DNA from: Dimorphilus gyrociliatus
Lineage: Eukaryota > Animalia > Annelida
DNA length: 64,000 bases
Assembly (NCBI GenBank): GCA_904063045.1
Contig: CAJFCJ010000020.1
Span: 236,425 to 300,424, forward strand
Reading direction: 5' to 3'
Part shown: positions 1,958 through 35,828 of the stretch, piece by piece
How the letters are laid out: every line of letters begins with the position of its first letter
Position numbering within the stretch: the first letter of the stretch is position 1
Translations under genes and position numbers: made by a program
The notes under the pieces: model-generated
Told to the model about the DNA's origin: nothing
The model's input: the letters and a program-made list of their open reading frames with translations, nothing else
The model's database searches: none

Positions 1958-2986
1958 ATGCTGAAAAACGAATCGGTTCCGCTAAGCAGCGACGATTCCT
2001 CAATCGAATGTCTCATTAAACGCGTTAATCTTCTCTTGGCTATAATTGCAATTGTGGTGCATTTCTTCTGCGCATGCGCATTTCTGGGTAAAAAGTTTAA
2101 GAAAGTCGCCGGAGTGAATTTCCTGATTGCTTTAAGTTCATCGATACAGTTGGTTTTTGCGTGTTATTTGATAAATTGGATTACAGCAAACACTGGACTC
2201 AAGCTAACAGGCCAAAAGTTTGTTTGTCATATGCACGTCCTCATCGAAAAATCAGCATTATTTCTCTCAGTTTGGTTCTCAGTATGTTCATGTGTCGAAA
2301 GAGCAATCGCTTTGTCTTTTTATGACAGAAGTAGGAATTATTGTAGTAGCTCAAAGGTGAAAATTACTATATTTCTCTTATCTACCTTTGCATTAGTTAT
2401 AAATTTAAATATTACAACAACCTTCGAATTACTTTTCTCAAAAAGTGCTAAAAGATACTTCTGCGTACAAGATATTGATCGTAATGTCGAGTATACTTTG
2501 GAATTCCTTCATCTAATATTCAATATTCTACTACCATACACCATTAGAATACTCTTAATAATTCTCCTCATTAAGACTCTGCATAAGCACTCGAACACGT
2601 TACAAAGTCTTGATCCACAATTAACTGTTAGTATTTCAGACTTAGAACTTACCAGAAGTGTTTGCTGGTCAACTATTTTTCACTTGTTTTTTGTTGCACC
2701 TAATCATTTTTTAAGAATACTTGCTTTTACTCCGAAATTTGATTTAATACGGCGTAAAAGGTATTTGCAAGGTTCCTTCTACACACTATTCATATTCAGT
2801 TTCTCGTCCCACCTCTTTTTTTATTTCTTGTTTATGAAAGCATTCAGGAAGAGCCTTAGAAGATTGTTTGTTAACTTGATTACGCTAAAAACGTGTCGTT
2901 GCCGAAAGAAAAAGCTAGTAAACAGTGATGGCTCGCTAATAGAAGACGCTAGAGTTATCAATTTAGAGAAAACAACAGCTTTCTGA
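1958..2986 (+). CDS. Intronless rhodopsin-class (class A) GPCR, orphan/peptide-receptor-like, 342 aa
   Basis: The first ATG in the 1901-2986 ORF is at 1958. The protein has seven hydrophobic segments, CSCVERAIAL at the DRY position, Cys residues in TM3 and ECL2 (KFVC, YFC), and a basic helix 8 followed by a CRC motif. Confidence 0.85.
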   Translation: MLKNESVPLSSDDSSIECLIKRVNLLLAIIAIVVHFFCACAFLGKKFKKVAGVNFLIALSSSIQLVFACYLINWITANTGLKLTGQKFVCHMHVLIEKSALFLSVWFSVCSCVERAIALSFYDRSRNYCSSSKVKITIFLLSTFALVINLNITTTFELLFSKSAKRYFCVQDIDRNVEYTLEFLHLIFNILLPYTIRILLIILLIKTLHKHSNTLQSLDPQLTVSISDLELTRSVCWSTIFHLFFVAPNHFLRILAFTPKFDLIRRKRYLQGSFYTLFIFSFSSHLFFYFLFMKAFRKSLRRLFVNLITLKTCRCRKKKLVNSDGSLIEDARVINLEKTTAF

Positions 2987-5900
2987 AAGATTACTACTGG
3001 AAATTGGATATGTTCCCATTATATCGTGATCTTTATTGTTTATTTAAATATTTTTTATTGGGCTTATCAAATTATTAATGGTAACAAAACAACTCTGCAT
3101 TTCTTATACTGTATATAAATTGTATGAATTGTTTAATTAAATGGGTGCTTTGTTTTATTCTAAGTAAGAATAAAAATATATTATTGCTCTTTCTAGAATT
3201 CAAAAGAAGGCAAAAGCGTGAAAGAAAAAATGTATCATCTTCTCTTCACTCTTGAAGGATTTTATACTATATACTTTTCTTCATCTTTCATCTTTGTAGT
3301 CTAACAATGTAAAGTCCTTTCCATACTATTTATCTACACTTTGAAATATGACAATTAAAATTATTATTTCTTTTTTCTAATAATTTATTTATAGAAACCT
3401 AAATGTGACCAAAGACCGAATAAAAATAACTTTGATCTTATAACTCCGCATTTGTATGCCCGGTTAGCAGCGTTTATCCAACGCAATCTACCTAGATAGA
3501 ATAAACTTTTTCTTCTCTTTTATCCCTTTCCTTTCCTAACGAAAATGGAAAACGAGATGAAGGGATTTTTTTCCTATTAATAAACAGACTATATATATAT
3601 ATATATGTATATATATTTATATTCTTGATAAAACATACTTAATAATAACCTTCTCAATTCCTAGATAAAATAAAAATAAAATAAAGCCAATTTTCATTTA
3701 AATAATGTCATTTGTTCCAGATATATAAATAATAAAGAGGTGTTTTTCTTTTAAAGGAGATTTGACTGTAATCTTTGGAATTAAAATTTTAAGAGGAAAA
3801 CAAATTCGCTAAGGGATTAAATTTTCTCATAAAGACTAGCACTTGATCACTTTTGCAGGGTTATATGAATTTTCCAAGCTTTCACATTTTCTTAGATTAT
3901 TCCTTCTATGGAATGGTGTTTCTTTTCCGCCTACAGCTCTTCCAACACATTATTTATTTATATATATACTGTATAACTATATATATATATATCTATATAC
4001 TGTATATGTATTACGTAAAAAAAATATAGCACATTTCCTATGAAACAAATATACATCAAAGTTTTGTATGAAAACATAGGGGATTTCTATATGAAGCTTT
4101 ATGATCAGATATATGAGGATTCGTGACTATGTCTCCTTTTTATGTAATGTGTACATTTTGTAATATATGTATGTATAGCATATTTATAAAGTATATATGT
4201 AATTTATAAGAAGAAAAATTCTATGGCATGTGAAATAATTACGCCTACCTTGTGAGCAATTCATCTTATATCTCTTATCGTTAATTCATAAATAACATAC
4301 AAATCAGAGTGTTTTGTGGATACGGTAGTTTCATCTCTATAAAAATAGAATAAGAAACGTTCTAAATGTAGTCTTGGTGTATTATACTTGGAACGTCTTT
4401 ATTAGTATGTGTTAAAAATACAACGTATCATTTGCTTCGTTCGATTCGGCATTCATATGAATAAAAAGATGCTCTATTCTGCTTTTCGATGTCATATTCT
4501 CATGCCTCATTGACGTCATATTGCGTGTTTACTTATTTCATCGATCGACTAGATTTTTACAATATCAAAAAGAAAATAAATAATAAAAAACAATCACGAG
4601 AAAATATTTTTAGATTTTATTAAAAGAGAGTAGAACAATTGATTTTATGAAAAACATTTTTCGTAATAGACCAAAATATTCTAGTATGTAAATCTTTTCT
4701 CACTCGACAATTTCTTTTTGATATCGGCTTGTCTGGTGAAATGGACTTGGAGATGACGATAGCTAATTAACAACTGATGCCATAAGGTAAGTATTAAGTA
4801 AAAGGTGAAGAAGTTTCGATTTAACTTGGCTTATTGAAGCCGGTTTATTTCCTTTTTCTGGTTAAATCATTTTGTCTTAATAATCTAATTCGTATACAAT
4901 TTTAGTATGACATTTCTTTATATAATAGAGGAAAATAGCCTCCAGTTTTTTTCTTTTCATTTTCACCCTCTAGAATATCAAAATTATTTTAATAATGTAA
5001 AAACAAGATATTTATCTCAACACTACGGTTTCGAATGAATATATGAAGAATCGACTAACGAAATCAATATACCAACTATAGATAATTTTTCCTTGCTGGA
5101 TCATTGAACTTGCAGACAACTTTTTACAACTCAACAACTCCTGTATAGAGTCTGTCAAGTGGAATTTCTTTCTAGTCCAAAGCATACACCTGCTATTTTT
5201 ATCTTTCCCTTGTAGACTTTATTGAAGCAATAATTATTCAATTAGATATAATTCCGATCGGCTATGGAAAACGAAGGTATATAATTTTTTAAACATAAAA
5301 ACGTAGTAATTTTTTAATGTTATACCACTTTCGCGGGGATTATATGTTAAAGAGAAAGGTGCTTATTAATTCAATTACTCTAACTTTCTCATTAATAAAG
5401 AGAAATATAACAATATTTATGAGAGTGTGGCTTGTAAACGCCATTTTAAAACCTTTTACCATTGATGATTCCAGAAGTGGAATTTAAGAAAACGATCATC
5501 TCGAGTGAAATAAGCTTTTCTCTAAATGCAACAAAAGCCTATTCTAGACTCTTGATGTAATCTAAATAATAAAAAAAAAAGACTGTTTTACCAAGAAACT
5601 ACATTCAATTACCTAATGACGTCAACAACTTTCTTATTTTACTATTCAATAAATAGAAATTTTTGCCTCTCTATTCTTGATTTAATGAAAAATCTTTAAT
5701 AAAATAGTCTAATATAAAAAATTAACTTTATCTATAATAAAAAATGAAAAAAAGAGAAACAATAAAACAAATTACATATATAAATAATACAGAAATTAAT
5801 TAAAAAAATAGATAAATTCGAATAGAAATATATTTTTTCTGAAAACAGAAGCTAGATGCAGCTGTGTAATATTGATTAATAATTCTTTAAATTAATATAG

Positions 5901-29419: not shown

Positions 29420-32400
29420 GACGCAGCGGTGATTAGACGCCTCGAGGCTGCGTGACGCCTCACAATAAGGCAACTGTAATGATGAGAGTATTATACGGAT
29501 TCGACTTTGCAGTTGGGACGTAATTATGGGCGTCTGATAAAAATCATTTTCGAATAAATATTTTATAAGAGGATGTTCTTTAAAAATGCGGTTGACAAAG
29601 CTTGTCACTTGTCACAGAGACGTCCCTAGTGGGTAACTGCAACGAACTCCATTTCATACTCTTTTCAGTCTTTCTAATTTTTTTTCTCTCTATTTGACAA
29701 ATTGCAGACGGACTTGTCAATTTGAAGGAGACGTTCGGAGAGCACCTGCGTGCCACACCCTGTCAGGCGTCTAGAGCACGTGCAATCTCGGCGTCTCTCG
29801 ACTATGAGTAGCACCTGCACCCTTTGTCTTTGCGGAACACGTGCGCCCGGCAGATGTGCATACATATGACGGCCGTAGACGTCATGTTTGCTTTTGGTCT
29901 TTCCAATAAGACTGACGTTTCACTTTCTCAATCTAAGCCAACGCAATGGCTCGTTAAAAGACCGAAATCCGAAGCAATTTCACGCAACGTTACTCCTTTG
30001 GGGCGTCTCTGCGGCGTTTCACGGCTCGTTTTGTTTTATTCGGAGTCACCTTTCAAAAGCTATGAAAATTCGACTCCTAGCTTGTTTGCCTCACTCGTTC
30101 GAATGGGCGGATTGAGTTACTCGTAAACAAGTTGGCAAACTACGCTAAGGCTCGTGTATGTTTGTAAATGTTGCGTGTTTTTTGATAGGTTGGTTGTAAA
30201 GAGAAAAACATGGGCTCTCTCATCTCTCTCTTTGCCAGTCTGTCGTTCCTCCTTTCTCCGTTTAAGTCGGCAGATGACTAATACTCGCGACGACGTCGAG
30301 GCAGATGCGTGCTACGAATATTGCAGCTGTTGAGCATTCCCAGCACCTGGTATATGGCGTCGTCATCAACTGCAACGCCACCTGCACGTCCATCTGCCAC
30401 CTTTCTTGAAATAACCGCATCTGCTCGGAGCCCTCGAGATAGAAGCAGTTCATTGAAAAAAAGGAATACGGGGGTCGAATCAACAAGAGAATATAATCAG
30501 AGAGGAATACGATTTTAAAGAGAAATCGTTTAAGAAAGGCGATGACACTCGGTCCGTGCAGAGCTGGACCGCCTGTAATGACGTAACAGTTTCGAACGTT
30601 TCACGCACCTGGATCGAGTTGTGTCTATAGGCCGCCGTAGGCATTCGACACATGTCTTGTGCAGGTGGTGACATTCTTCGCATCACTGGTGCTGCCACTC
30701 CGTGAGAAAGTGGCGATTTGAATAACGAGCTTACTGTTTTTAAAGCTTCCGAAATAATACATGAGCATAACAAAGCAAAGAAGTATTTGATGAGAAACTA
30801 AATGAAGGAGCAAAAGAAAGAGTAGAAAGAGAAGTGGGAACAGAGAAGAGACAATAAATGAAAGGGAGATGGAGAGGGGGAGAGAGTGAATGAGGGAGAG
30901 GGTTGACGATTGAAATAAAGGAATGAATTTTCCACGTTTTTTATCTACAGGGTACTTAACGCCCAATTGTAATACCGGTCAGTCATTAGACGAGCCCGCG
31001 AATTGCATCACAAAACTCTCGAGCAGCTATGACACTTCCGTTCGTCGTTCAATAAATCACAAGTGCGACAAACAAATAACTCGAATAACCCAGCGATATT
31101 GCGATTTTTGGGCGTTCTGTCAACAGAAGTTGGCAGGTGAAATTATCGTGTCGAATACATAAAGAGCAGGGATTAAAAACGCCTCCTTTTGGATTAGATA
31201 GATTCAACCTTTTCACATTCTTTTTTTTTATGTCAAAATTCTTCTTGTACTCTCTCTTTTCTAGAAAAGTTCAAGCATCTCTCGTCACCCGTATGCATTC
31301 CTTGCGAATAAGCGCATCTGTGTTTTCCGAGGTCTTTCTTTCATTACTCCATTAGATCGAGCCTCACCAAAATATTGCCGTCACCTGGCGTTTGCCTTCG
31401 GAACGTTCTCCAGCACCAGGTGTCGAATGTATGGCGTGTCAGAGTAACAAGAGTGGCAATGTTTGGCGCCAAATGACAGGCATTCCTAAAGGCGCTTTTC
31501 TCCGCACCTGACTAAACACTGACGTATACATTTCGCCTTATTCAATAGGCCTATTTTGATTGGCCACCTAACAAACGAAAGAGGTTGGAAAAAGAAATAA
31601 AAGAGTAGATAGAAGGAAAGAGAGGAAGAAAAAAAATAAACGCCCGTCAAGTAGTGCGCATATGGCGTCTTCATTTCGCTGCGTCTGTCGCAGTTTGTCC
31701 AGCTTTCGAATATGCAGACAGACCAGACGCGTTACACATCTGCACCGCAGTTTGTCAGATAACAATATACTAATTAATTGATGTCATTTTTTTGTATTCA
31801 ACTATTCGTAAAAGCAATTTAGTTTTTACACTTGAATAATTCTTAAACAAACTATTATTTTGTCTTAAAAGAATGAAAACAAACTATATTACAATAATTT
31901 TTCTTGTACTAAGTAAACCGGTAGACGTCTCTCTTTTTCCAGATCACTTCATATATATTGCACTCGCCTGTTTTCCAGATCCGGCTGGATTTCTCGACAT
32001 TGACGACCGTGAGAGCGAAACCAGCTCGCTGCAAAAGAATAAATAATCGAATCAATAAAACAGGTGCGGGAACGAGACGTCTTCTAACAAAAAGGAAATA
32101 AAAAGCCCTAGTAGGGAGTTTTCTGAGACGGGTGCTTAAGACCGGATTTTTTATGAGTGAAACGGGCAAGCGTTAGCCCCCGGTGCAAAAAAATGCAAAT
32201 CTAATCAGGTCGTCGCGGCCGAACCTGACGTCGTCACTCGTAATCGAATTTTTTTCCTTCTTTACTTTTTTGCTACAAGAGCGCCGTCTTACAGCGTATT
32301 ACAGTCACGCGAGACGACGCAATCAAAGAAGAATCTCGCTTGGCGCATATCTAGTCGCCTAGAAGATTTCTCCGGGGACTAGAACCAACTTGTATGCGCT

Positions 32401-32996
32401 AAGCAATTGTTTTATTGACGCCCGTCGCTATGGTGACGGCGGTCATTACTAACGCTGCATAGACTTTCGTTGCCTAGCTGACTGCACAATGTGACGTCGC
32501 GTCGATATAAATATATTCATTTACTTGCTAAACAAACTTATGTATAAATATAAATAGGAAAATTCAACTTACCAATTAAAGGACGGTTGAGATATCCAGA
32601 AAAACGCTGATTAGTACCAGCGTTTCTCTATATATAATGATTAAAATGGTTGAATGTCGGTTGTCTGCAATAACAAATAAAACATGAGATATGTACATTT
32701 TTGTTATTTTCACATATTCTATCAACTATTCGATAAACTATAGTACATTGCTTAAAAGAAACGCACAGATGTGCTTAAAAAGATAGAGAGCATTAAACGC
32801 CGGCTGGTTTGTTTATGATGAATAATAGAGAGCGGGCGATAATTTACGAAAATGAAATAGCAGATGCTTCGTTTCGAATTGTTTAGACAAGTTTGCGAGA
32901 AAAGCCGGCGGCGTATGGCGTGCACCTGCACCTGTACCGTGTCAATACTTAACAGTTTGCTATGACGACCCCCGCTTTATCGGGCAGATAAGCCCT

Positions 32997-33446
32997 TTAC
33001 AAACAAGCATCATCTGGCACCCCAGCAATGTTTTCATAGGCGCTGTTTGTCTGAACGGCCGACTCGTATGATGTTATCTCGAATAGGCGCCTTTTATAAA
33101 TAAGTCTGATAAGGCGCCGTTTGACATCGAACAGACAACTTACCGTTAACCGGTGAAATGGTAAATTCATTGGGTTTTCGCCTAAAGGCGTTCGTCCTTC
33201 AGTAGGCAGGCAGGGTGAACAGTCGAGTTCGAGCGTCATTTCCAGATCGAAAATATAGTCAATAACGTGTTGTAGGAGTTGTACTTTGCTGACCTTCTTG
33301 TCGTTAGGTATTGTAGGTACGAGATCTCGTAATTTGGCAAAGTAAGAGGCCATTTCACCATCGATTACGTGTGTAGCATGTGATTTCTTCACACCACCTT
33401 CTCTCATAGCTCCAGCAGTACGAGGTTGACAAATTTTAGCTTTCAT
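32997..33446 (-). CDS. id/emc: Id/extramacrochaetae HLH inhibitor lacking a basic region, 118 aa. Exons 33446-33144 and 33050-32997
   Basis: The N-terminus MKAK is Id-like. The [38 protein letters not shown] has no basic region, and RTPL follows it as in Id proteins. A 93-bp GT-AG intron gives the C-terminus VPDDACL, reminiscent of ID1. Confidence 0.9.
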
Positions 33447-33611
33447 TTTCTTATTTGATTCGTAAACACAAATTCCTTTTCTCAAAAATAACAATTTGTA
33501 GGCAGTATAGTCGCTTTTTCGTTAGTAAATTTTCCTCAGTATGGAAAAACTCAAGACGTTTCGTAATCAACTTCTGGGAACGATCTACATCGACATTAGG
33601 CAACAATTCAG

Positions 33612-33700
33612 TATATATACTTGAATTGGTAGGGTTCCGTATTCCGTATCACAAATCTAACCAATCAGCGTCAAGAGTTTTAGGGCTCTTAACCAATCAC
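33612..33700 (-). promoter_or_regulatory. Putative Id core promoter
   Basis: TATATATA at 33612-33619 and CCAAT boxes near 33661 and 33692, 170-250 bp upstream of the ATG. Confidence 0.45.
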
Positions 33701-33928
33701 CCCTTAGAGCACAGCAATGTCAATCACTGTTCAAACACCTGTTCTCAATAGCTGCCACCAATTATGTGATGACTGTCGTACTGCAATAGCTAAGATTTTT
33801 CCTCTTTTTTAAGAAGGCGTGTTCACAATTTTTGACGGCTCGGCAGGTGAAGCTGCGGGAAAGCCATCGAGTCGTTCGGTCAGCAGCTGTTAAACGCCTA
33901 TAGGTGGTTGAAAAGATCAAAAGCCCGA

Positions 33929-35828
33929 TTCCCACAGATTGAAAGCCGACGTTCAGCATTTATATAGGCTGATTTGCACGTCCGAGCAGGCTTATTTCTT
34001 GTTCTTATTGTTTTGCAGGTGCAGCTCGTTCAAAGACATTTTTCCCACACTGTTCATACAAAATCAAATATTCCCGGGCGCCGTACTGTCTGTACAACCA
34101 TTCAGACATAACACCTTTCTGGCGCCGGCCTGGCGCCTCCTCCCCGTCATTTCAAAGCACCGCGCTGATAAAACACATTAAAAGTGCTCAGGTGTTCACC
34201 AGGCCACACACACCTGCACATTTGCATACAACTCATGAATATGTATTAGCCGTAGTAAAGAAAAACATGTATACATATACAAGTTAGGCCTATTATTAAA
34301 TACACGGAAAGAATAATTGATCTGCTCGGACGACTATTGATCGCGATCGATCGCAGCTGGTTGTTGGCCATTGCCTTCGATGACCCTTTCTAAAACGGAT
34401 AGGACGGGGAACAGCAGATGTAAGGAAGAACTCTTGACAGGTGCTGCCTAGCATTCCATTCTCCACCTGGCACTATTGTGCCGCATATGTTCGGTCATGC
34501 GCCGCTGCGCCAATCCACGTTCCATGCACATTTCATGCGGTGCGTGGAATTTAATAAATGAATGAAGGAATGAAGGCAAGGAATAAAAAATGGAAAAGAA
34601 GAGAAAAGAGAGATAGCATGCATGAAATATACTGTATTTTAACAATGAGAACGCCCGTCTGTCTCTCCCTGATGCTGCCATCGCCATCATATCCGCAACC
34701 GGCTTCGGTTCATTTCCTGTTTCTGTTCAGCATAGTAAAAGCGTTTCCAAGGAAACGCTTCATTCGATACGTTATCGATTCTGCGTTAAATAATTATATA
34801 CGCTATATTGACAAGGCATTTTTGCAAGAGTCATAGGAAACGTTGGACGGTTGTCATTTGAAGCAATTATGTATTTATTCATTAATAATGCAATACAAAA
34901 ACGCCCCCGATACGGCGATTAAAACTCAATAACGAAGCTTATTATATCGCCGTGAAATACTGCAATACATCACGAACTGAAGCGACTGCAATTTAGCGAC
35001 CGTGTAATTGCAGTTGCAGATGACCGAATCTGGTACTTGTGCACAAAGTAATTATTAACAGTTAGTTCATTCTGTTCTTGCAGTGTCAAAACTAAGTTCG
35101 CACTCGTTCAGTCATCTCGGCGTTTCACACGCACAAAAACTGCTGCAATTTTCCATTCATATTCACCGGAAGTTAGTCTTTGCTGCCCCTATGTGTAAAC
35201 TGCATAAAATACTGTGAAAAACCACTGAATTTATCATCAAAATCTGTCTATTCATGACGATCAGTTTTATCTCCACTATTAATGTACTCTCAACAAATTA
35301 TTGGTTTAAGTTAGACAACAGAGTGATGTTAAAAATCAATGGTACGGGTCAAAGATTGTTTGCAGTCTTCGTGCGTGTCACCTTTCACTTGTTTGCAATC
35401 AATCAGAAAGAAATCCGAGGTTCGGCTTAGACAGGCCTATTTAAATGGTGACGTATATTTATATGTTTAATATACTGAATAAATGTATATAAAACCTTAG
35501 CTGGGTGTGTTTAGAATGGTAATGTATCTTGTGTTCGTATGGGAGAAACGATCAAGAGGTCAAGAATGCCTGGTTGCTCCTCATAAAAGCAAGGTCACCA
35601 TAGATTAAATTGTCAATGTAAGATAGTACTAACTTTATTAAAAGATTCACAGCGAGAGATAAGTGAATGTTTTAATAGACGTGATTTATCTCGTCTGTTC
35701 GTTAATAAGCGGCGAGTATAGAAAACTGTCAGTCATAGTACTCTCTCTTTATCAGATCATCAATACAACGGTTTACTGCTAACTGTATACCAAGGTGGTC
35801 ATTGACGGTCACTTCAAAAGCGTGGGAA
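33929..35828. promoter_or_regulatory. Su(H)/RBPJ consensus sites upstream of Id
   Basis: TTCCCACA at 33929 and 34042, and CGTGGGAA at 35821. A further CGTGAGAA lies downstream of the gene at 30701. Confidence 0.45.
34077..34092 (+). promoter_or_regulatory. BMP response element (Smad1/5-Smad4/Schnurri type) upstream of Id
   Basis: GGCGCC-GTACT-GTCTG is an exact GRCGNC(N5)GTCTG match. Two further GGCGCC sites lie at 34121 and 34132. Confidence 0.65.

What the first reader, a model, noticed from the sequence alone, without database searches (positions are those of the whole stretch)
34077..34137. Exact vertebrate-style BMP response element upstream of an invertebrate Id gene
Seen: GGCGCC-N5-GTCTG about 630 bp upstream of the Id ATG, plus two tandem GGCGCC sites 40-55 bp away. 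Established: GRCGNC(N5)GTCT is the Smad1/5-Smad4-Schnurri element, known from the Drosophila brinker silencer and vertebrate Id/Vent BREs, and Id genes are hallmark direct BMP targets in vertebrates. My rough hand estimate of a chance match within 1 kb is about 1%. Inference: direct BMP-to-Id wiring may predate the protostome-deuterostome split.
Basis: partly seen in the sequence, partly recalled or inferred. Interest (0 to 1): 0.75.

Follow-up and report, generated by a model that had tools for sequence, protein, structure and literature searches.

The report
Known ancient BMP switch before Id
The motif is real and sits in this worm's version of an ancient DNA switch in front of the Id gene, already described in 2012 in vertebrates, sea urchins and snails, so it extends a known case to segmented worms and is not new wiring.

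Summary
Observation confirmed. GGCGCCGTACTGTCTG lies at 34077-34092, 628-643 bp upstream of the ATG (33449, minus strand) of an Id-family HLH gene of Dimorphilus gyrociliatus. It is the only match in 64 kb. The two nearby GGCGCC sites (34121-34137) are spaced by exactly 5 bp.

It is not chance. A profile built only from other species' Id upstream regions (Ridgeia, Lingula, Haliotis, Priapulus, Saccoglossus) gives a single hit in the window, 34247-34078, E 1.4e-05. The motif's GGCGCC is invariant in all nine aligned species.

The region matches Bicore1, the Smad-site enhancer upstream of Id genes (Clarke et al. 2012, PMC3410860), known in deuterostomes and two gastropods.

New here:
- Annelid instances, with brachiopod and priapulid ones seen in passing.
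- The worm has lost the ATF/CRE palindrome and one GGCGCC site.
- Its GTCT half lies on the opposite side of the GGCGCC from limpet and vertebrates, so the exact vertebrate-style match is probably rebuilt, not inherited.

BMP responsiveness in this species is untested, and its sign (activation or Schnurri-type repression) is inferred. The scan holds three other unchecked BRE-type notes elsewhere in this genome.

The parts
34077..34092 (+). SE/ID-type Smad composite GGCGCC-GTACT-GTCTG, read CAGAC-N5-GGCGCC in the direction of the Id gene. This is 'site C' of the conserved Id enhancer.
   Evidence: Searches show a unique match. In alignment A4 the GGCGCC is invariant in 9 species. The profile alignment ends on it.
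34098..34104 (-). TGAATGG block. In other species it directly precedes the ATF/CRE palindrome TGACGTCA. Here the palindrome is replaced by TTGTACAG.
   Evidence: TGAAT is invariant in A4. TGACGTCA is absent from the Dimorphilus enhancer.
34121..34137 (-). GGCGCC-N5-GGCGCC homocomposite ('site B'). In gene direction it reads GGCGCCAGGCCGGCG, which fits the Drosophila BMP activating element GGCGCCA(N4)GNCV.
   Evidence: It aligns with the (GA)CCGCC-N5-GGCGCC block of the other species. A 5-bp-spaced GGCGCC pair is BMP-responsive in human cells (PMC11907993).
34165..34172 (-). TTTATCAG block, GATA-like by my reading.
   Evidence: TTTATC is invariant in A4.
34211..34227 (-). Octamer-like ATGCAAAT plus E-box CAGGTG block.
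   Evidence: ATGCA.AT..CAGGTG is invariant in 9 species. Dimorphilus and Lingula share an 18-nt run across it, ATGCAAATGTGCAGGTGT.
34051..34247 (-). The whole conserved promoter-proximal enhancer, the Dimorphilus counterpart of Bicore1.
   Evidence: nhmmer gives a single hit at 34247-34078, E 1.4e-05, with a model from named species only, and 34230-34076, E 1.8e-05. Positions 34051-34242 show zero differences from the close relative L001, where flanking non-coding DNA is about 90% identical.
33959..33966 (-). TATA box TATATAAA.
   Evidence: Sequence. It lies 33 nt upstream of the adaptor-tagged cDNA 5' end. An AAATCAG block followed by an A/T-rich box is also found downstream of site C in Lingula, Saccoglossus and the unidentified lineage.
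33931..33933 (-). Probable main transcription start. This places the motif at about -144 to -159.
   Evidence: The contig of run X13 ends at 33933, followed by letters that I recognise from memory as the reverse complement of a template-switch cDNA adaptor (table 7). This is one low-depth contig.
33144..33933 (-). Id exon 1: 5' UTR plus coding sequence 33449-33144 (102 codons, HLH domain). An RNA contig of run X3 extends further upstream, to 34112.
   Evidence: record 13 covers 33144-34112; the joint 32664/33144 has GT..AG ends on the minus strand.
32573..32664 (-). Id exon 2: last 7 codons and stop TAA at 32643-32641.
   Evidence: Joints. The reading matches the database protein P0016, DgyrCDS12308.
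31778..32028 (-). Id exon 3 (3' UTR).
   Evidence: Joint 32028/32573 and contig ends at 31778 with a T-rich loose end.
32800..33143 (-). 5' part of intron 1, unusually conserved with the close relative. It holds two more GGCGCC sites (33086, 33113). Possible second, lineage-specific enhancer.
   Evidence: 99-100% identity against 83-92% in exon 1. No similarity in other phyla.

Best explanation
The motif is one of two 5-bp-spaced Smad composite sites in the Dimorphilus gyrociliatus counterpart of the ancient promoter-proximal enhancer of Id genes, published as Bicore1.

The likely mechanism has three steps, all inferred for this species:
1. After BMP receptor activation, two phospho-Smad1/5 MH1 domains bind the palindromic GGCGCC.
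2. Smad4 binds the GTCT, or the second GC site, 5 bp away.
3. The complex, about 150 bp upstream of a TATA promoter, raises Id transcription together with factors bound to the neighbouring conserved blocks (octamer/E-box, GATA-like, TGAATGG).

Shown here: the sequence, its uniqueness in the window, its homology and same block order with the enhancer in five named species, and the gene structure. Not shown: Smad occupancy, BMP dependence and the sign of the response in this worm.

My confidence by step is about 0.9 that this is the orthologue of the known enhancer and about 0.6 that it mediates BMP-dependent activation in this species.
For: Homology to Id upstream regions of other phyla:
- A model built without Dimorphilus gives a single nhmmer hit in 64 kb, at the right place and on the right strand.
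- In alignment A4 the two GC sites, TGAAT, TTTATC and the octamer/E-box are invariant across 9 species.
- Leave-one-out E-values run from 2e-49 to 7e-81 among Ridgeia, Lingula, Haliotis, Priapulus and Saccoglossus.
- The Saccoglossus hit lies 0.5-0.84 kb upstream of Id, where Clarke et al. place the acorn-worm Bicore1.
- The printed limpet Bicore1 sequence shares the same blocks, compared by eye.

Smad syntax:
- Composites with 5-nt spacing give 28 matches in about 3.4 kb of enhancer across 11 loci, against 3 in 132.6 kb of their flanks. Palindromic pairs are counted on both strands.
- Both GGCGCC-N5-GTCTG, in either orientation of the whole motif, and GGCGCC-N5-GGCGCC confer a BMP response in human cells (PMC11907993).
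- The Smad sites of Bicore1 are needed for the BMP response of Id1. BMP gain and loss expand and reduce id expression in a sea urchin (PMC3410860).

Recent constraint: there is not one difference across 34051-34242 from a relative whose non-coding DNA is about 90% identical.
Against: - There is no functional or occupancy data for Dimorphilus or, in the papers I found, for any annelid Id gene.
- The similarity of the Dimorphilus copy is weak (17.8 bits), and it lacks two conserved parts: the TGACGTCA palindrome and the distal GGCGCC 'site A'.
- The motif ends in T with a 5-nt linker. That is the Schnurri-recruiting silencer type in Drosophila.
- An RNA contig covers the motif, so in at least some transcripts it is transcribed rather than upstream.
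- The genome paper reports a reduced TGF-beta ligand set in Dinophilidae.
Confidence: 0.7

Rival explanations
1. BMP-dependent silencer. The Smad1/5-Smad4 complex on GGCGCC-N5-GTCT recruits a Schnurri-type zinc-finger protein and represses Id where BMP is high, as at the Drosophila brinker silencer.
For: The motif meets the Drosophila BMP-SE consensus GRCGNC(N5)GNCT, including the 5-nt linker and terminal T that Schnurri needs (PMC7669266). Dimorphilus has lost the activating-type GNCG partner that most other species keep downstream of site C.
Against: The same syntax activates ID1/2/3 in vertebrates. The neighbouring twin site fits the activating element GGCGCCA(N4)GNCV. I could not check whether this worm has a Schnurri protein with a repression function. 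Sea urchin id is activated by BMP.
Confidence: 0.12
2. A conserved promoter element that no longer answers to BMP. The GC sites would be kept for other factors (E2F-like or other GC-box binders), or for Activin/TGF-beta Smads, and the composite spacing would be a leftover.
For: Clarke et al. also read E2F-type matches in the element. The ATF site that mediates the TGF-beta response in mammals is gone here. Dinophilids have a reduced TGF-beta ligand set.
Against: Dimorphilus kept, and at site B perfected, exact 5-nt spacing twice within 61 bp; the expected count is 1.5e-5 for the twin alone. Across species a partner half-site is found on either side of the GGCGCC while the 5-nt spacing is kept, which is what selection for a Smad composite would give.
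Confidence: 0.12
3. The element acts in the RNA, as a 5' UTR sequence of a longer Id transcript, and not as a DNA binding site.
For: The RNA contig of run X3 spans 33144-34112 and so includes the motif.
Against: A TATA box and an adaptor-tagged 5' end place the main start at about 33933, downstream of the motif. The conserved blocks match transcription-factor sites. In Capitella the element is inverted relative to the gene, yet conserved.
Confidence: 0.03
4. Chance occurrence of a short GC-rich motif in a GC-richer promoter.
For: The first-stage reader scanned many features, so some rare motifs near interesting genes are expected.
Against: The expected count is 0.00075 per kb locally. The GGCGCC sits at the invariant alignment column in eight other species, and the profile hit in the window is unique.
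Confidence: 0.01

Closest known systems
Bicore1, the bilaterian conserved regulatory element upstream of Id genes (Clarke et al. 2012, PLoS Genet, PMC3410860). It contains the classical Id1 BMP response element of Korchynskyi & ten Dijke 2002 and Lopez-Rovira et al. 2002.
   Same: It lies upstream of an Id orthologue. It has two GC-type Smad sites in the same order, with TGAATGG between them. There is significant profile similarity at the same place upstream of Id. Site C lies 550-640 bp from the ATG in Dimorphilus, Ridgeia, Lingula, Priapulus, Haliotis and Saccoglossus.
   Different: The 8-bp ATF/CRE palindrome, which the paper calls perfectly conserved across clades, is absent. The distal GGCGCC (site A) is absent. 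The Smad4-type half-site lies on the other side of site C. Site B is a perfect GGCGCC pair. The paper knew the element in protostomes only from two gastropods, and Frith & Ni 2023 (PMC10735318) still say so.
Vertebrate 'ID-type' SMAD heterocomposite GGCGCC-N5-GTCTG and the GGCGCC-N5-GGCGCC homocomposite (PMC11907993, 2025).
   Same: Exact match in half-sites and 5-bp spacing for both types, 29 bp apart.
   Different: The linker is GTACT (ID1 TGGCT, ID2 AGAGA, ID3 AGGCT). Relative to the gene the motif is in the CAGAC-N5-GGCGCC orientation, which gave a weaker response in that study. It lies about 150 bp from the probable start, whereas the SMAD-bound composites of that study lie mostly in intergenic enhancers.
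Drosophila BMP silencer element GRCGNC(N5)GNCT (brinker; Pyrowolakis et al. 2004) and activating element GGCGCCA(N4)GNCV (Dad; Weiss et al. 2010), as summarised in PMC7669266.
   Same: 34077-34091 fits the silencer consensus. 34123-34137 (minus strand) fits the activating consensus.
   Different: These are motif classes, not homologous elements. Clarke et al. found no Bicore1 counterpart in insects. Whether Schnurri-dependent repression exists in annelids is unknown to me.

Membership tests
Smad1/5-Smad4 BMP response element (5-bp-spaced composite) | GC-rich Smad1/5 site GGCGCC (GRCGNC) | tested here: met
   34077-34082, 34121-34126 and 34132-34137.
Smad1/5-Smad4 BMP response element (5-bp-spaced composite) | Second half-site (GTCT/GNCV or a second GC site) exactly 5 bp away in back-to-back orientation | tested here: met
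   GGCGCC-GTACT-GTCTG and GGCGCC-GGCCT-GGCGCC. The orientation rule is taken from PMC11907993.
Smad1/5-Smad4 BMP response element (5-bp-spaced composite) | Occupied by pSmad1/5 and Smad4, and needed for a BMP-dependent change in transcription | not testable with these tools
   I found no ChIP, CUT&RUN or perturbation data for Dimorphilus Id.
Bicore1 (Id enhancer of Clarke et al. 2012) | Upstream of, and in conserved position relative to, an Id orthologue | tested here: met
   The Id HLH gene is directly downstream. It is DgyrCDS12308.
Bicore1 (Id enhancer of Clarke et al. 2012) | Detectable sequence similarity to other instances, with binding-site blocks in the same order | tested here: met
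   nhmmer E 1.4e-05, the only hit in 64 kb. Blocks are in the same order in A4. The link to the published element rests on the Saccoglossus hit at the published distance and on the printed limpet sequence compared by eye.
Bicore1 (Id enhancer of Clarke et al. 2012) | 8-bp ATF/CRE palindrome TGACGTCA between the Smad sites. The paper describes it as the most conserved part. It is a characteristic of the element, not the paper's criterion for calling one. | tested here: not met
   Absent from the Dimorphilus enhancer, where TGAATGG is followed by TTGTACAG. Present in Ridgeia, Capitella, Lingula, Haliotis, Priapulus and Saccoglossus. I therefore file this as a divergent orthologue, not a typical member.
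Bicore1 (Id enhancer of Clarke et al. 2012) | Enhancer activity in vivo | not testable with these tools
   Clarke et al. tested human, zebrafish, urchin and limpet copies. No annelid copy has been tested.
Drosophila-type Schnurri silencer (BMP-SE) | GRCGNC(N5)GNCT with a 5-nt linker and terminal T | tested here: met
   The consensus is from PMC7669266.
Drosophila-type Schnurri silencer (BMP-SE) | Schnurri recruitment and BMP-dependent repression | not testable with these tools
   No data. The Schnurri gene of this genome was not examined.

The most novel reading that the evidence does not exclude
The Id enhancer is a roughly 300-350-nt pan-bilaterian promoter-proximal module, much larger and more widespread than the ~100 bp reported in 2012. 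It is present in Annelida, Brachiopoda and even an ecdysozoan (Priapulus). Its GGCGCC anchors have kept their spacing (about 190 and about 55 nt) since the bilaterian ancestor, while the Smad4-type partner half-site moves from one side of an anchor to the other. Under genome compaction, Dimorphilus trimmed the module to its Smad, octamer/E-box and TGAATGG core and discarded the ATF site. That would point to the 5-bp Smad composites as the indispensable part.
Probability: 0.55. Interest if true: 0.5.

Novelty: new member of a known kind. Interest (0 to 1): 0.35.

Why it matters
Non-coding elements shared by protostomes and deuterostomes are very rare, and the Id enhancer is one of the first two described. 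A recognisable, pared-down copy in a miniature annelid with a 74-Mb genome has three uses:
- It gives a small natural 'minimal version' for asking which sites are essential.
- It gives annelid developmental biology a concrete candidate read-out of BMP signalling.
- It shows that an exact motif match with vertebrates can arise by rebuilding around a conserved anchor, so it need not be inherited as such.

It does not change the accepted picture that BMP control of Id is ancient.

Tried and rejected
Tried without result:
- The coral-tank metatranscriptome contigs (X6, X8) hold a 93-95% relative, but their contigs stop at 33460 and do not reach the motif.
- MAFFT alone mis-aligned the motif between Dimorphilus and L004 because of an indel. 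Views anchored on the sites and profile search resolved it.
- The machine-read Figure S2 of Clarke et al. is garbled, with rows repeated, and was not used. Dataset S1 was used instead, by eye only.
- The taxon of the four metagenome loci L004, L006, L007 and L009 could not be found. Cluster names, BLAST against named Id proteins, the protein atlas and enhancer identities all left it open.
- A Monte Carlo estimate of the chance rate timed out and was replaced by an analytic Markov estimate.
- Single-sequence nhmmer with intron 1 found nothing in other phyla.
- Papers on annelid BMP perturbation do not mention Id in their main text, at least under the names I could search; the bare word 'Id' is too short for the search tool.

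Considered and rejected:
- Chance match.
- An RNA-level element.

Constraints observed:
- The spliced Id coding sequence was not joined by me. Only exon 1 was searched by reference, and the database protein P0016 stood in for the spliced product.
- The human sequences printed in the paper's supplement were read but sent to no tool.
Full report
**1. What is in the sequence**

The motif GGCGCCGTACTGTCTG lies at window 34077-34092 on the + strand. It is the only match in the 64-kb window, on either strand, to GGCGCC-N5-GTCT (0.02 expected from shuffles) and to GRCGNC-N5-GTCT (0.15 expected). Two more GGCGCC sites lie at 34121 and 34132. The window holds eight GGCGCC against 2.06 expected, and five of them are in or beside one gene.

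That gene is on the minus strand. Its ORF starts at ATG 33449 and has a Pfam HLH domain (2.8e-11). Its best solved relatives are human ID2 and ID1.

A local Markov model of the 1 kb upstream of the ATG gives these expected counts: 0.00075 for the exact motif, 0.006 for the loose consensus and 0.000015 for the twin site.

**2. Organism and gene structure**

A search with exon 1 by reference returned a cluster whose named member is DgyrCDS12308 of Dimorphilus gyrociliatus. This agrees with earlier notes of the scan.

Public RNA contigs define three exons, with GT..AG joints on the minus strand:

| Exon | Window coordinates | Content |
|---|---|---|
| 1 | up to 33144 | 5' UTR and coding sequence from 33449 |
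| 2 | 32664-32573 | last 7 codons; stop at 32643-32641 |
| 3 | 32028-31778 | 3' UTR |

The database protein P0016 served as the spliced product.

One contig of run X13 ends at 33933, followed by letters that I recognise, from memory, as a template-switch cDNA adaptor. A TATA box (33966-33959) lies 33 nt upstream of that end. This places the motif at about -144 to -159 from the probable main start.

A contig of run X3 runs on to 34112 and so covers the motif. Some upstream transcription therefore exists, and I cannot explain it.

**3. Is the motif conserved?**

I fetched Id loci of relatives through the protein hits.

- *Close relative L001.* This Logan contig encodes a 94-96% identical protein and carries the identical motif. 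More tellingly, positions 34051-34242 show not one difference, while the surrounding non-coding DNA is about 90% identical and even exon 1 is only 83-92% identical.
- *Distant species.* A strict or near-strict composite sits upstream of Id in Capitella teleta and in three of four unidentified metagenome contigs.
- *Anchored views and alignment A4.* These show a shared module of blocks in the same order:
  - GGCGCC 'site A';
  - about 45 nt on, an ATGCAAAT...CAGGTG block;
  - TTTATCAG;
  - TGATTGACAG;
  - (GA)CCGCC-N5-GGCGCC, 'site B';
  - ACAGT-TGAATGGGTGACGTCAC;
  - 6 nt on, GGCGCC 'site C' with a partner half-site 5 nt further.
- *Spacing.* A to B is 188-201 nt. B to C is 53-55 nt in Haliotis, Lingula and Priapulus, and up to 75 nt in the unidentified lineage.
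- *Position.* Site C lies 553-633 bp from the Id start codon in Haliotis, Lingula, Priapulus, Ridgeia, Saccoglossus and Dimorphilus.

**4. An objective test of homology**

A profile HMM built from seven other species, without Dimorphilus, finds one hit in the whole window: 34230-34076 on the minus strand, E 1.8e-05. A model from the five named species alone gives 34247-34078, E 1.4e-05.

Leave-one-out runs among the named species give hits over about 290-350 nt:

| Species left out | E-value |
|---|---|
| Ridgeia | 1e-50 |
| Lingula | 7e-81 |
| Haliotis | 2e-59 |
| Priapulus | 2e-49 |
| Saccoglossus | 4e-57 |

Capitella matches at 4.9e-07, in inverted orientation relative to the gene.

The Dimorphilus copy is thus a weak but specific, correctly placed relative of a very strongly conserved module.

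**5. What it is called**

A literature search led to Clarke et al. 2012 (PMC3410860). They described 'Bicore1', a ~100-bp element upstream of Id genes. According to that paper:
- It contains the Smad sites of the classical Id1 BMP response element, E2F-type matches and an 8-bp ATF palindrome described as perfectly conserved across clades.
- Human, zebrafish, urchin and limpet copies drive expression in zebrafish.
- Sea urchin id responds to BMP gain and loss.

The link to my loci rests on two things:
- The limpet sequence printed in their Dataset S1 shows, by eye, the same blocks as my loci: TATCAG, TGATTGACAG, GGCGCC, AATGGGTGACGTCAC, then GGCGCCAGTCAGTCTG, then TTGTTGATTGT.
- My Saccoglossus hit lies where they place the acorn-worm element, 0.5 kb from the transcript.

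The Capitella genome was on their search list but was not reported as a hit. The annelid, brachiopod and priapulid instances appear to be additions.

**6. How the Dimorphilus copy differs**

- It lacks site A.
- It lacks the ATF palindrome: TGAATGG is followed by TTGTACAG instead of G-TGACGTCA.
- Its site B is a perfect GGCGCC-N5-GGCGCC. In gene direction this also fits the Drosophila activating element GGCGCCA(N4)GNCV.
- At site C, most species carry the partner downstream as GNCG:
  - Haliotis GGCGCCAGTCTGTCG;
  - Priapulus GGCGCCAGCCTGGCG;
  - Lingula GGCGCCACACTGCCG;
  - Saccoglossus GGCGCCAGCGAGCCG;
  - Capitella GGCGCCAGTGTGTCG.

  The limpet has GTCTG there. Dimorphilus has nothing downstream (CGGGA-ATAT) and carries CAGAC-AGTAC on the upstream side, overlapping what used to be the ATF site.
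- Three of the four contigs of the unidentified lineage have the same upstream arrangement, TGACGT-AGAC-N5-GGCGCC.
- Ridgeia has GGCGCC-AGTAC-GGCGCC there, with the same linker as Dimorphilus.

The anchor is therefore ancestral, while the 'exact vertebrate-style' half-site is most simply read as a lineage-specific replacement. Which of the twin B sites matches the canonical B is ambiguous, as is whether a 10-11-nt deletion occurred between B and C.

**7. Smad syntax as the selected feature**

Across the 11 loci, GGCGCC-N5-GNCV or GGCGCC-N5-GNCT gives 28 matches in about 3.4 kb of enhancer and 3 matches in the remaining 132.6 kb. Palindromic pairs are counted on both strands.

In Ridgeia, Lingula, Haliotis and Priapulus, the B and C composites are mirror images around the TGAATGGGTGACGTCA core.

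A 2025 study in human cells (PMC11907993) found that:
- GGCGCC-N5-GTCTG and GGCGCC-N5-GGCGCC are each sufficient for a BMP response;
- any other spacing fails;
- the reverse-complement placement CAGAC-N5-GGCGCC still works, though more weakly;
- GGCGCC-N5-CAGAC does not work.

Both Dimorphilus composites obey these rules.

**8. Mechanism and its uncertainty**

The best reading is BMP-dependent activation of Id through Smad1/5-Smad4 binding, about 150 bp upstream of a TATA promoter.

The main rival is repression. In Drosophila, a 5-nt linker and a terminal T are what let Schnurri join the Mad/Medea complex and silence the gene (PMC7669266). The Dimorphilus site C is of that type, having lost the activating-type partner.

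I could not examine the worm's Schnurri or Smad genes. The genome paper notes a reduced TGF-beta ligand set but an intact receptor set, and says that most regulatory information lies within 1 kb of starts. That fits a compact promoter-proximal enhancer.

Public ATAC-seq and CAGE data exist for this species, but I had no reads call left.

**9. Verdict**

| Question | Verdict |
|---|---|
| Observation | Confirmed |
| Chance | Excluded |
| Identity | Divergent annelid orthologue of a published bilaterian Id enhancer |
| Function in this species | Inferred, not shown |
| Novelty | Low for the concept; modest for the taxonomic extension and for the pared-down, partly rebuilt architecture |

Three other unchecked first-reader notes report BRE-type motifs near the E-protein gene, Msx and a Meis/Pbx element elsewhere in this genome. 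I did not test them.

Noticed in passing
window 32800-33143 (Id intron 1): The 5' part of intron 1 is 99-100% identical to the close relative L001, although exon 1 is only 83-92% identical. It holds two GGCGCC sites (33086, 33113), several GATA-like sites and a double E-box. No similarity was found in other phyla. It may be a lineage-specific intronic enhancer.
   Followed up: partly
L012 5178-5476 (Priapulus caudatus); L011 5185-5538 (Lingula anatina); L010 5176-5467 (Ridgeia piscesae): The Id enhancer is strongly conserved (leave-one-out E 2e-49 to 7e-81) in a priapulid, a brachiopod and a siboglinid annelid, over about 290-350 nt. The literature I read knows it in protostomes only from two gastropods and as a ~100-bp element. 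Priapulus would be the first ecdysozoan instance.
   Followed up: partly
L005 4496-4559 (Capitella teleta): The Capitella copy is inverted relative to the Id gene and has a shortened B-C distance. This may be why the 2012 screen, which searched this genome, did not report it.
   Followed up: partly
L004, L006, L007, L009 (metagenome and Logan contigs): An unidentified animal lineage has Id enhancers 77-87% identical to each other and only 53-66% identical to every named phylum. In three of these four contigs every 5-nt-spaced Smad composite ends in T (the Schnurri-competent type); L006 also has one ending in G. The site C partner is on the upstream side in L004, L007 and L009, as in Dimorphilus.
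   Followed up: partly
L007 522-536 versus L009 5077-5091: The same enhancer lies 5.5 kb from the ATG in L007 and 0.9 kb in L009. L007 therefore seems to carry a roughly 4.5-kb insertion between enhancer and gene, which includes a 222-aa ORF at 2395-3063.
   Followed up: no
window 33934-34112: An RNA contig of run X3 extends 180 nt upstream of the TATA-linked 5' end and covers the motif. This may be a minor upstream start or promoter-upstream transcription. It is unexplained.
   Followed up: no
window 31500-33460 in runs X6-X9: Coral-tank metatranscriptomes and metagenomes contain contigs 93-95% identical to this locus. A close relative of this worm therefore lives in those coral samples.
   Followed up: no
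window 34103-34107: A further CAGAC (GTCTG in gene direction) sits directly upstream of the TGAATGG block, 13 nt from the twin GGCGCC. It is not in 5-nt register with any GC site.
   Followed up: no
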